Below are positions 162 to 1,091 of a stretch of 64,000 nucleotides of DNA, in pieces. Made by a program: the position numbers and the translations under genes. The notes beneath the pieces are model-generated. The model saw nothing but the letters and a program-made list of their open reading frames with translations. It did no database searches and had not been told where the DNA came from. Each line of letters starts with the position of its first letter. The stretch's first letter is position 1. The DNA is taken from sequence record LR756502.1; one strand, written 5' to 3'.

Positions 162-1091
162 AAAGTCTACCCCTTCGTCCTCGATGGGTAATATCCAAAT
201 AAAGACGCAAATAGGATGTTTCAGACTTTGTACCAAGCTTCGACTTCGGTTGTTGTGTAGGTAGGGCGGCTTATAGTCCTTAAATAAACCTCGAAAGGGG
301 GATAAAGTGAGTATCATTGCTAAATGATATTTGCGGTTTGAACTGAAAGGTTTGAGCTCGAGTAAGCAAGCGAAATACCACAAAATCTGTAGTAATGAGG
401 GTAACTCCGTAGTGAAACGATTTTGTGATTGGGTGAACGTAGGTCACTTGATTGACTTCGGAAGAAGAACAGGAATAATTCGTAGGAATTTTGTGAGAAA
501 TATCGGCTTAACCGGCTAGTATGATTGCGAGTTCTAATTCAAGAGATGTCTTAAAGTTGAAAGACAATTCTTCTACCAGGTGGTGCTGTTGAAGAACATT
601 AATCTGACTACCAAGTTGGTAGGTATCATCGCAAGGTGGTATCGTGATGAAGAAATCTTAAAGAATTGTGATGGAGGCATCACACAGAGTAGTTCAGTAT
701 TTTGTCTGTCAAAAACGGATGAAGCTGAGAGGAGACCACTACTTTGACTTAATCTACAAGCACAAAAAATTTACTTATGATGTAAAAACTATAACTAAAT
801 CAAAAGTGTTTCCTAGTTATCAATGAAAATTGACTACTTAGCCGTGAGTTGTTCACGGTCACATTAAGCCCGAAAGGCGGATGTGATTTCAGAGAAAAGC
901 TTATAGAGGGTCGAACCTCTAATCAGTTCGCAAGACTGAATAAGTGGAGTAAATGGAGAATAGTTGATAACTTAAGGAGTGGTTGGTCTAACTAACCGTC
1001 ATTGACAAGTTACTACTCAAAAGGTAGTGGATAGATTTGGGAATAAATAATCCAAACAGAGGCTTGTTGTTTTAGGATGTAATCTCAGTCC
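162..1091 (+). ncRNA. Large structured non-coding RNA, GOLLD-like by size and context
   Basis: No credible ORF; more GC-rich than flanks; dense helices such as AAAGTCT162-168/AGACTTT223-229, CGAC-TTCG-GTTG 241-252, CCTC-GAAA-GGGG 289-300, CACAAAATC379-387/GATTTTGTG419-427, TATCATC-GCAA-GGTGGTA 624-641, TGTGATG-GAGG-CATCACA 667-684, GCCGTGA/TCACGGT 841-859, TAGAGG/CCTCTA 904-921; bracketed by tRNAs. Family identity not verified. Confidence 0.7.

What the first reader, a model, noticed from the sequence alone, without database searches (positions are those of the whole stretch)
162..1091. ~930-nt ornate RNA sandwiched exactly between two tRNAs (GOLLD-like)
Seen: the first helix starts 8 nt after tRNA 1 and the element ends 9 nt before tRNA 2, with one terminator at 1178-1205. 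It has well over a dozen helices with UUCG/GAAA/GCAA tetraloops, a 5' three-way junction (162-229), nested AGTAGT688-693/ACTACT738-743, and a candidate long-range pairing GCTGAGA724-730/TCTCAGT1083-1089. Known: GOLLD (~800 nt) and ROOL (~600 nt) RNAs are phage-associated, tRNA-adjacent and functionally unexplained. Inference: flanking tRNAs act as RNase P/RNase Z punctuation to release a giant RNA; the two aberrant tRNAs and this RNA may be one system.
Basis: partly seen in the sequence, partly recalled or inferred. Interest (0 to 1): 0.82.

Follow-up and report, generated by a model that had tools for sequence, protein, structure and literature searches.

The report
GOLLD RNA between two odd tRNAs
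This is a copy of GOLLD, a known giant phage RNA that builds RNA-only cages and whose function is still unknown, found here in a 642-kb phage and bracketed by two unusual tRNA-like genes that probably act as cutting marks to release it.

Summary
Rfam's GOLLD model (RF02032) hits window 685-1091 end to end at 275 bits (threshold 150, E 2e-77). That model covers only the 3' domain.

The 5' half (262-684) is the conserved GOLLD 5' domain:
- In a 43-sequence alignment, 97 pairs are 97.9% paired (about 40% when slid), and 74 have compensatory changes.
- The cryo-EM construct env-38 (833 nt, 14-mer cage) aligns to window 262-1091.

The window is LR756502.1, an unannotated 642-kb uncultured phage.

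Both flanks are tRNA-Glu-like cloverleaves with an 8-nt anticodon loop (CUUUUCAG). tRNA 1 also carries a 43-nt hairpin insert in its D-loop. A tRNA-Glu-like gene of this kind follows GOLLD at 8-13 nt in all four lineages of this huge-phage clade. Other GOLLDs carry tRNA-Met in the same slot or none.

Two details fail. The 5' three-way junction is not conserved (z = -1.2). The 724-730/1083-1089 pairing does not covary.

Release by RNase P and RNase Z, and cage assembly, are inferred, not shown.

Verdict: a new member of a known family. The mildly novel part is the aberrant tRNA partner.

The parts
39..154 (+). tRNA-Glu-like gene 1. It has a cloverleaf, an 8-nt anticodon loop (CUUUUCAG, 114-121), G1.U72 and no encoded CCA.
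   Evidence: The minimum-energy fold is a cloverleaf, z = -2.2. ARAGORN calls it like tRNA 2 once the insert is removed. In family alignment A2, 92% of cells are paired and 11 of 20 pairs have compensatory changes.
59..101 (+). 43-nt insert in the D-loop of tRNA-like 1, lying between G18G19-U20 and A21. It is predicted to form two small hairpins.
   Evidence: Comparison with tRNA 2. Inserts of 16-23 nt sit at the same site in L001, L123 and L124, and longer ones in L128, L129, L132 and L146.
155..261 (+). It lies upstream of the point where the env-38 construct begins.
   Evidence: Not conserved in A1. z = -1.21. env-38 aligns only from about 262 onwards.
262..684 (+). GOLLD 5' domain, which forms the cap of the cage in env-38.
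   Evidence: 19 helices and 97 pairs: 97.9% paired against 38-41% when slid, and 74 pairs with changes on both sides. About 58% identical to env-38 residues 1-420, which satisfies 85 of the 97 pairs.
685..1091 (+). GOLLD 3' domain, the universally conserved half and the ring of the cage.
   Evidence: Rfam RF02032: 275.3 bits, gathering threshold 150, E 1.9e-77, model positions 1-416 of 416.
747..808 (+). A-rich variable linker. It is disordered and faces the cage interior in env-38 (nt 497-538). No tRNA is embedded in it here.
   Evidence: Unpaired, low-confidence stretch of the Rfam alignment. 41% identity to env-38. No tRNA is called inside it. Linker position is from PMC12286853.
906..918 (+). 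Hairpin matching L21a, loop GUCGAA with a self-complementary CG/UCGA core. My numbering follows helix order.
   Evidence: 41 of 44 sequences have CGCAAG (GC core). The three huge-phage copies in that alignment have GUCGAA. The GC/CG switch is the covariation reported for inter-chain bridge B8.
1075..1091 (+). Terminal hairpin P27 with the near-invariant loop GUAAUCUCA (L27).
   Evidence: In env-38, L27 pairs with P23 and J24/26, not with 724-730.
1092..1100 (+). 9-nt U-rich spacer (UUUUUUUAU) between GOLLD and tRNA-like 2.
   Evidence: Spacers of 8-13 nt in the same slot in L001, L123, L128, L129 and L131.
1101..1173 (+). tRNA-Glu-like gene 2. It has no D-loop insert, an 8-nt anticodon loop (CUUUUCAG, 1133-1140), G1.U72 and no CCA.
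   Evidence: Rfam tRNA 52.8 bits, threshold 29. ARAGORN reports tRNA-??? with a 2-nt anticodon. The fold is a cloverleaf, z = -3.3.
1178..1205 (+). Intrinsic terminator: a 9-bp G+C-rich stem followed by a T-run. It ends the unit.
   Evidence: L002 13178-13198 equals window 1178-1198, plus the T-run.

Best explanation
Window 262-1091 is a GOLLD RNA gene of an uncultured 642-kb phage, LR756502.1, whose host is probably a Bacteroidota bacterium. It has a 107-nt lineage-specific leader (155-261).

Proposed mechanism:
1. One transcript is made. It starts at a Bacteroidota-type promoter (TTTG-N20-TATCTTTG) 16-48 nt upstream of window position 1. It reads tRNA-like 1, then GOLLD, then tRNA-like 2, and stops at the terminator at 1178-1205.
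2. Host tRNA-processing enzymes recognise the two cloverleaves. RNase Z, or 3' trimming, cuts after A154. RNase P cuts before G1101.
3. This releases a GOLLD of about 946 nt (155-1100).
4. By homology with env-38, the 5' and 3' domains fold separately. The RNA then self-assembles into a closed homo-oligomeric cage, most likely of the 14-mer type because both P21a and P21b are present. The A-rich linker faces the interior.

Shown: family membership, structure by covariation, conserved synteny and retained kissing-loop palindromes.
Inferred: transcription, cleavage sites and cage assembly.
Still unknown for the whole family: what the cage does.

My estimates: GOLLD identity above 0.98, single transcription unit about 0.8, release at the tRNA boundaries about 0.6, cage formation about 0.6.
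For: - Rfam GOLLD: 275.3 bits over the full model.
- Nothing else credible in a permissive scan.
- 190 consensus pairs, 140 with compensatory changes, and the window satisfies 178.
- 5' domain alone: 97.9% paired, 74 of 97 pairs compensatory, 0 of 500 shuffles as high, slid controls about 40%.
- env-38 aligns to 262-1091 at 58-60% identity and satisfies 164 of 190 pairs.
- L21a keeps a self-complementary core, with GC changed to CG.
- z = -4.6 for the whole element.
- The window is 100% identical to phage LR756502.1.
- A promoter motif is conserved upstream in L002, L001 and L123, with a single terminator downstream.
- Both flanks are cloverleaves maintained by covariation.
- A tRNA-Glu-like gene sits 8-13 nt after GOLLD in all six loci, four lineages at 74-80% identity.
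- In other clades a tRNA-Met ends just 5' of GOLLD in 11 further IMG/VR loci and starts at +123 to +136 in 10 loci, the same slot as tRNA 2 at +125.
- The phage's tRNA genes encode no CCA, which fits endonucleolytic 3' processing.
- Only ORFs of 88 aa or fewer overlap the element.
Against: - There are no transcript data, so ends and abundance are unknown.
- Most GOLLD loci (about 95 of 120) have their own promoter and terminator and no adjoining tRNA. Punctuation is therefore not required by the family.
- The flanks are aberrant: an 8-nt loop that can zip into a 7-bp stem with a UUUC loop, a D-loop insert and G1.U72. This could impair recognition or point to another role.
- L129 lacks the 5' tRNA-like gene.
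- Reported oligomer number varies within the family between 10, 12 and 14, and the extra 107-nt leader is not in any solved structure.
Confidence: 0.8

Rival explanations
1. Passenger in a tRNA operon. The two flanks are working phage tRNAs, either a Glu isoacceptor or a four-base (GAAA-type) or frameshift decoder with an 8-nt loop. GOLLD merely shares their promoter and terminator. The adjacency reflects common expression and inheritance, not a dedicated relationship.
For: - The same 8-nt-loop tRNA-Glu-like genes occur in arrays without any GOLLD motif within the stretches fetched: LR756504 (L125, L126) and L127, L135, L138, L140, L142, L144, L134, L136, L143.
- The cloverleaf and the UUC core of the loop are under selection.
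- GOLLD is known to sit in or near tRNA islands.
Against: - A tRNA abuts GOLLD at a fixed 8-20 nt 3' distance, or directly 5', in many unrelated clades. That looks like more than loose clustering.
- The 5' copies carry large D-loop inserts and, in L001 and L123, a bulged T-stem. These are poor signs for a decoding tRNA.
- The loop can close into a 7-bp stem.
Confidence: 0.25
2. Two-component system. The aberrant tRNA-Glu-like RNAs are dedicated partners of this GOLLD clade. They might stay tethered, be caged cargo, act as decoys for a host anticodon nuclease, or be stored inside the cage. They would be more than cutting marks.
For: - The 3' partner is conserved across four lineages while GOLLD diverged to 74-80% identity.
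- The partner is a peculiar tRNA type seen in only about 20 IMG/VR loci.
- Published hypotheses already propose covalently linked or stored tRNAs.
Against: - No conserved complementarity links the odd loop to GOLLD. Three of six copies have no match of 6 nt or more, and the recurring site is a generic A-rich loop.
- The odd tRNAs also exist without GOLLD.
- Other GOLLD clades use tRNA-Met or nothing.
- Synteny within one clade can be simple inheritance.
Confidence: 0.12
3. A new class of ornate RNA that only resembles GOLLD, or a chance AT-rich intergenic fold, or a coding region.
For: The 5'-most 107 nt (155-261) have no family counterpart and fold no better than shuffles.
Against: - The full-length Rfam match is nearly twice the threshold.
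- Both domains are homologous to env-38.
- 140 pairs are compensatory.
- Only ORFs of 88 aa or fewer overlap the element.
Confidence: 0.01

Closest known systems
GOLLD env-38 (marine metagenome; 833 nt; cryo-EM 14-mer with D7 symmetry, PDB 9MEE; Kretsch et al., Nature 2025, PMC12286853)
   Same: - Both domains align: window 262-1091 is 830 nt against 833 nt.
- Identity is 58% in the 5' domain and 60% in the 3' core.
- env-38 satisfies 164 of the 190 consensus pairs.
- Both have the two P21-type hairpins, the L27 loop and an A-rich linker at the equivalent place (env-38 nt 497-538, about window 758-799).
- Both sit next to a tRNA.
   Different: - The window has an extra 107-nt leader.
- The L21a core is CG (UCGA) instead of GC.
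- The neighbours are two aberrant tRNA-Glu-like genes, one on each side, rather than an upstream tRNA-Met.
- The host genome is a 642-kb phage.
- Assembly has not been tested for this copy.
Streptococcus agalactiae GOLLD (700 nt, dodecamer, PDB 9L0R; 3' domain alone is a decamer, 9LMF; reviewed in PMC12990946)
   Same: The same family and the same conserved 3' domain. The 5' domain caps the assembly and fixes its stoichiometry.
   Different: The S. agalactiae RNA lacks P9, P11a-c and P21b. The window copy follows the fuller env-38-type pattern.
Mycobacterial GOLLD inside tRNA arrays (PMC6582537; Morgado et al. 2020)
   Same: tRNA genes lie on both sides of GOLLD, and a pseudo-tRNA is associated with it. 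A phage origin is inferred.
   Different: There the tRNA or pseudo-tRNA lies inside GOLLD, in the J13/15 linker, and the array holds about 32 ordinary tRNAs. Here the linker is tRNA-free and the two flanks are one aberrant tRNA-Glu-like type.
ROOL RNA (phage and prophage, tRNA-island-associated, octamer cage)
   Same: The same kind of genomic context and the same general behaviour, an RNA-only cage.
   Different: Unrelated sequence and fold. No ROOL match in the window, even at a permissive threshold.
tRNA-punctuated RNA processing (mitochondrial tRNA punctuation; MALAT1-mascRNA; tRNA spacers in bacterial rRNA operons). This comparison is from established knowledge.
   Same: It would work the same way: cloverleaves flanking a long RNA recruit RNase P and RNase Z, which define the long RNA's ends.
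   Different: Cleavage has not been demonstrated here. The cloverleaves carry an 8-nt anticodon loop and, in one of them, a D-loop hairpin insert.

Membership tests
GOLLD RNA (Rfam RF02032) | Covariance-model score at or above the curated gathering threshold, over the full model. | tested here: met
   275.3 bits against 150, E 1.9e-77, model positions 1-416 of 416, window 685-1091.
GOLLD RNA (Rfam RF02032) | Conserved 3'-domain helices kept by compensatory change. These include the long-range helix 815-824/963-972 and the terminal P27 with loop GUAAUCUCA. | tested here: met
   Consensus of 43 sequences: 190 pairs, 140 compensatory, and the window satisfies 178.
GOLLD RNA (Rfam RF02032) | A separate, less conserved 5' domain of the env-38 (lake) type. 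| tested here: met
   97 pairs, 97.9% paired, 74 compensatory, slid controls 38-41%. env-38 residues 1-420 align to window 262-684 and satisfy 85 of the 97 pairs.
GOLLD RNA (Rfam RF02032) | A variable unstructured linker after the first hairpin of the 3' domain. | tested here: met
   Window 747-808 is unpaired, A-rich and poorly conserved.
GOLLD RNA (Rfam RF02032) | Self-complementary kissing loops (L21a, L21b) that join the two half-shells. | tested here: met
   At sequence level only. L21a is GUCGAA with a CG palindrome, against CGCAAG in 41 of 44 sequences. L21b keeps a GC core. No structural test was done.
GOLLD RNA (Rfam RF02032) | Encoded by a phage or prophage, near tRNA genes. | tested here: met
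   100% match to phage LR756502.1. tRNA-like genes lie on both sides, and a tRNA island lies 11-12 kb upstream.
GOLLD RNA (Rfam RF02032) | Homo-oligomeric cage assembly. | not testable with these tools
   Needs purified RNA with mass photometry or cryo-EM. It is inferred from homology to env-38 only.
GOLLD RNA (Rfam RF02032) | Expression that rises during lytic growth. | not testable with these tools
   Uncultured phage.
tRNA (the two flanks) | A cloverleaf kept by covariation, with a T-loop GTTCGAAYC and D-loop GG. | tested here: met
   Alignment A2, 9 sequences: 92.2% paired, 11 of 20 pairs compensatory, slid controls 28-53%.
tRNA (the two flanks) | Detection by standard tRNA models. | tested here: inconclusive
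   tRNA 2: Rfam 52.8 bits (threshold 29), but ARAGORN gives tRNA-???. tRNA 1: missed by ARAGORN's default search and by Rfam, and called by ARAGORN only after the 43-nt insert is left out.
tRNA (the two flanks) | A canonical 7-nt anticodon loop with a 3-nt anticodon. | tested here: not met
   The loop has 8 nt, C-U-U-U-U-C-A-G, in both copies. The pattern CU-N-UUC-R-G is conserved across the family. It can also close into a 7-bp stem with a UUUC loop.
tRNA (the two flanks) | CCA end, aminoacylation and use in decoding. | not testable with these tools
   No CCA is encoded, but none of the phage's ordinary tRNA genes encodes it either.
ROOL, OLE, HEARO, group I and II introns, small ribozymes | A match to the family covariance model. 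| tested here: not met
   No match at gathering thresholds over the whole window or at E <= 1 over window 1-1300.

The most novel reading that the evidence does not exclude
In huge Bacteroidota phages, GOLLD and an aberrant tRNA-Glu-like RNA form a functional pair. The tRNA-like RNA has an 8-nt anticodon loop, CU-N-UUC-R-G, and often a hairpin inserted in the D-loop. It would be the cage's cargo, tether or assembly partner, or a nuclease decoy stored by the cage. That would give the first concrete handle on what GOLLD cages do.
Probability: 0.12. Interest if true: 0.75.

Novelty: new member of a known kind. Interest (0 to 1): 0.35.

Why it matters
GOLLD was described in 2009 and was shown in 2025 to form RNA-only cages larger than a ribosome. 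Its function is still unknown.

- This copy places the env-38-type GOLLD in some of the largest phage genomes known (634-642 kb), in records that carry no annotation.
- In this clade, GOLLD's 3' end is always followed at 8-13 nt by one peculiar tRNA-like species. In other clades a tRNA-Met occupies the same slot.
- That regularity makes two ideas testable with simple in vitro work. One is that tRNA-processing enzymes set GOLLD's ends. The other is that GOLLD's biology is tied to tRNAs.
- Separately, the 8-nt-loop tRNA-Glu-like family, with its D-loop hairpin inserts, is an unusual phage tRNA type that standard tRNA finders mis-call or miss.

Tried and rejected
1. It is the minimum-energy fold, but z = -1.21 and it is absent from L001 and L123. 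I rejected it as a conserved feature.
2. It does not covary: 37 of 43 sequences give 5 or fewer of 7 pairs. 725-728 pairs locally instead. In env-38, L27 pairs with P23 and J24/26.
3. Complementarity between the odd tRNA loop and GOLLD. It is inconsistent across the six clade members.
4. A genome-contig scan for 8-nt-loop tRNA-Glu-like genes. All rows I inspected were chance hits in an ABC-ATPase coding motif of GC-rich genomes.
5. Looking for LR756502 or LR745206 in the published GOLLD alignment. They were not found, but the stored file is truncated, so this is undecided.
6. Weinberg et al. 2009 is not held in the library. Its content is cited only through later papers.
7. Sigma-70-type promoter scan: 10 sites found against 9.6 expected, so it is uninformative. 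The Bacteroidota-type motif was read directly from the sequence.
8. Protein-coding reading: only ORFs of 88 aa or fewer overlap the element.
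Full report
**What is there.**
Window 1-1260 is 100% identical to LR756502.1, positions 434,001-435,260. That record is an unannotated 642,428-bp uncultured phage genome. Rfam's GOLLD model (RF02032) matches window 685-1091 on the + strand over all 416 model positions, at 275.3 bits (gathering threshold 150, E 1.9e-77). The tRNA model matches 1101-1173 at 52.8 bits. A permissive scan of 1-1300 finds nothing else credible: no ROOL, OLE, HEARO, intron or ribozyme. It is a GOLLD RNA.

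**The 5' half.**
Rfam models only the conserved 3' domain, so I tested 162-684 separately.

- A motif from the 3' domain recovered more than 120 IMG/VR loci. A motif from the window's 5' half recovered two very large contigs, L123 (483 kb) and L124 (312 kb). BLAST found a 634-kb phage, LR745206.1, fetched as L001. All carry GOLLD at 278-287 bits.
- After dereplication at 90% identity (45 clusters), I aligned 43 representatives and predicted a consensus structure. It has 190 pairs, and 140 of them have at least one compensatory change. The window satisfies 178 of the 190.
- Restricted to the 5' domain, there are 97 pairs in 19 helices. Of all cells, 97.9% form standard pairs, against 38-41% when the partners are slid by 1-3 columns. 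Seventy-four pairs change on both sides, and no shuffle out of 500 reaches any of the five measures.
- The supplement of Kretsch et al. (Nature 2025, PMC12286853) gives env-38, the RNA used for cryo-EM. It aligns to window 262-1091 with 58% identity in the 5' domain and 60% in the 3' core. It satisfies 164 of the 190 pairs, including 85 of 97 in the 5' domain.

The core GOLLD is therefore 262-1091, which is 830 nt against 833 nt for env-38. The 107 nt before it (155-261) are a lineage-specific leader.

Confirmed:
- the distances to the two tRNAs (8 and 9 nt);
- the single terminator;
- the many helices and the UUCG, GAAA and GCAA loops;
- the 688-693/738-743 helix, which is part of a covarying 9-bp stem;
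- folding of the whole element well beyond shuffles, z = -4.6.

Not supported:
- The 162-229 three-way junction is the minimum-energy fold of the window. However, z is only -1.21, and L001 and L123 have a plain hairpin at that place.
- The 724-730/1083-1089 complementarity is 7/7 only within the window's own clade. Across the 43 sequences, 37 reach 5 or fewer of 7 pairs, because the 5' partner varies while the 3' loop (GUAAUCUCA) is nearly invariant. In the family model, 725-728 pairs locally with 694-697. In the solved structure, L27 pairs with P23 and J24/26.

**The flanks.**
Both flanks resemble tRNA-Glu(UUC) in the acceptor, D-stem and T-arm. Both have an 8-nt anticodon loop, CUUUUCAG. This is the Glu loop CU-UUC-A with one extra nucleotide after U33. 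They also share G1.U72 and have no encoded CCA.

- tRNA 1 additionally carries a 43-nt insert (59-101) in the D-loop. With the insert left out, ARAGORN calls it exactly like tRNA 2.
- Nine family members from three huge phages and the IMG/VR contigs keep the cloverleaf. Ninety-two per cent of cells are paired, 11 of 20 pairs are compensatory, and all five anticodon-stem pairs covary. The loop stays CU-N-UUC-R-G throughout.
- The loop can also zip up into a 7-bp stem capped by UUUC.
- A pattern scan found about 20 genuine genes of this type in IMG/VR, mostly on contigs of 150-480 kb.
- The parallel scan of reference genomes returned only chance hits inside a coding motif, so it is uninformative.

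**Conserved architecture.**
In the window's GOLLD clade there are six loci in four lineages that are 74-80% identical to each other. In every one, an 8-nt-loop tRNA-Glu-like gene follows GOLLD after an 8-13-nt U-rich spacer.

- A 5' tRNA-Glu-like gene is present in the window, L001 and L123/L124.
- L001 also has an ordinary tRNA-Met between that gene and GOLLD.
- L129 has no 5' tRNA-like gene, and GOLLD has its own promoters there.
- L128 and L131 are cut off too close to GOLLD's 5' end to tell.

Outside this clade, ARAGORN finds a tRNA-Met(CAT) in two fixed positions. It ends just 5' of GOLLD in 11 IMG/VR loci, and it starts at +123 to +136 from the motif in 10 loci. That second position is the slot of the window's tRNA 2, at +125. 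The remaining loci, about 95, go straight from a promoter into GOLLD and from GOLLD into a terminator.

The odd tRNA-Glu-like genes also occur with no GOLLD motif in the stretches fetched, in LR756504 and related contigs.

A Bacteroidota-type promoter motif (TTTG-N19-20-TAnnTTTG; the consensus is from established knowledge) lies 16-48 nt upstream of window position 1. It is conserved in L001 and L123. This suggests a Bacteroidota host and one transcription unit that ends at 1178-1205.

**How it most likely works.**
- Shown: this is a two-domain GOLLD with every sequence-level hallmark of the env-38 type. That includes both P21-type hairpins. The L21a loop reads GUCGAA here against CGCAAG in 41 of 44 sequences. 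The self-complementary core has switched from GC to CG, which is the covariation Kretsch et al. report for the inter-chain bridge B8.
- Inferred: a precursor of tRNA-like 1, GOLLD and tRNA-like 2 is cut by RNase Z or 3' trimming after A154 and by RNase P before G1101. This gives an RNA of about 946 nt that assembles into a closed homo-oligomeric cage, with the linker at about 747-808 facing inward. In env-38 the disordered interior linker is nt 497-538, which corresponds to about window 758-799.
- The phage's ordinary tRNA genes encode no CCA. That is the situation in which endonucleolytic 3' cleavage is used (established knowledge).
- The oligomer number is uncertain. Solved GOLLDs form 10-, 12- or 14-mers depending on which helices they contain.
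- The function of the cage is unknown for the whole family.

**Rivals.**
- The flanks may be working tRNAs and GOLLD a passenger in their operon (confidence 0.25).
- The flanks may be dedicated partners, as cargo, tether or decoy (confidence 0.12). I looked for conserved complementarity between the odd loop and GOLLD and found none.
- A non-GOLLD, chance or coding origin is excluded.

**Comparison and novelty.**
It is already established that GOLLD sits next to tRNAs, and sometimes contains tRNAs or pseudo-tRNAs. Three things are new here. First, an unannotated env-type GOLLD occurs in phages of 634-642 kb. Second, it is bracketed by tRNA-like genes at fixed distances. Third, the partner is a peculiar 8-nt-loop tRNA-Glu-like species with D-loop hairpin inserts. 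I rate it a new member of a known kind, with interest 0.35. The identity is ordinary for a specialist. The conserved aberrant-tRNA partner is a modest but testable lead on GOLLD biology.

**Context.**
The upstream gene is a short-chain dehydrogenase. Downstream lie MgtC, an epimerase, a DegT-type aminotransferase, an FkbM methyltransferase, a ClpB-like ATPase, glycosyltransferases and a C-methyltransferase fusion. This is an auxiliary sugar-modification region typical of huge phages. A tRNA island (two Pro, three Asp, four Gln, and two more found only by Rfam) lies 11-12 kb upstream.

Noticed in passing
window 39-154 and 1101-1173; L001 1171-1266, 2366-2462, 2545-2634; L123 8219-8314; L125, L126; L127-L146: A phage tRNA-Glu-like family with an 8-nt anticodon loop, CU-N-UUC-R-G, which has one extra nucleotide after U33. 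G1.U72 is invariant and the anticodon stem covaries. There are about 20 loci in IMG/VR, mostly on contigs of 150-480 kb. ARAGORN reports tRNA-??? or misses them. Whether they decode (Glu or four-base codons), act as decoys or are only processing handles is unknown.
   Followed up: partly
window 59-101; the same site in L001, L123, L124, L128, L129, L132, L146: Hairpin inserts of 16 to more than 40 nt sit in the D-loop of these tRNA-like genes, between G19-Y20 and A21. The sequences differ between lineages. I know of no precedent in bacterial or phage tRNAs. They are too short for a group I intron.
   Followed up: partly
L001 2466-2540; L124 (reverse strand) about 4545-4470; L129 (reverse strand) 3040-2965; also L128 and L131: A conserved element of about 75 nt (AAGTTTTCGTAGTGGTTAACTT...GAGGGTCTGT...ACAG...) directly follows the 3' tRNA-Glu-like gene in relatives. 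It is absent from the window. There was no Rfam hit at gathering thresholds. HDV-like theta ribozymes are known next to phage tRNAs (PMC10879173), so it could be a small ribozyme. This is untested.
   Followed up: no
L003-L122 (IMG/VR GOLLD loci): tRNA-Met(CAT) recurs at two fixed positions relative to GOLLD. It ends directly 5' of GOLLD in 11 loci, and it starts 8-20 nt after the 3' end in 10 loci. L019, L074 and L057 have tRNA-like sequences in the 3' slot that ARAGORN misses. I did not determine whether these are initiator, elongator or Ile2-type tRNAs.
   Followed up: partly
A1 columns 119-133 (L001 about 1438-1450; window about 216-226, degenerate): A strongly conserved GTTCTTTGAAA block lies upstream of the env-38 construct start in most GOLLD loci, just after the promoter and a small hairpin. 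No pairing partner was predicted. In the window it has degenerated to GATGTTTCAGA.
   Followed up: no
L002 131-1370 (LR756502.1 422,131-423,370): A tRNA island 11-12 kb upstream of GOLLD holds tandem near-duplicates: two Pro(TGG), three Asp(GTC), three Gln(TTG) and one Gln(CTG). Two more tRNAs, at L002 753-822 and 834-902, are found by Rfam but not by ARAGORN. None encodes CCA.
   Followed up: no
window 1266-32223: A long same-strand block of auxiliary genes: MgtC (1266-1733), NAD-dependent epimerase (2611-3537), DegT-type aminotransferase (3541-4710), FkbM methyltransferase (4714-5544), ClpB-like double-AAA ATPase (6544-8667), a GT2+GT6 glycosyltransferase (9475-11067), and an epimerase fused to a C-methyltransferase (17068-19671). 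This suggests phage-encoded sugar or glycan modification.
   Followed up: partly
L001 911-998: ARAGORN calls another odd tRNA (tRNA-???, 2-nt anticodon 'gt', 88 nt), and Rfam scores it 30.3 bits, just above threshold. It lies upstream of the GOLLD unit in LR745206.1.
   Followed up: no
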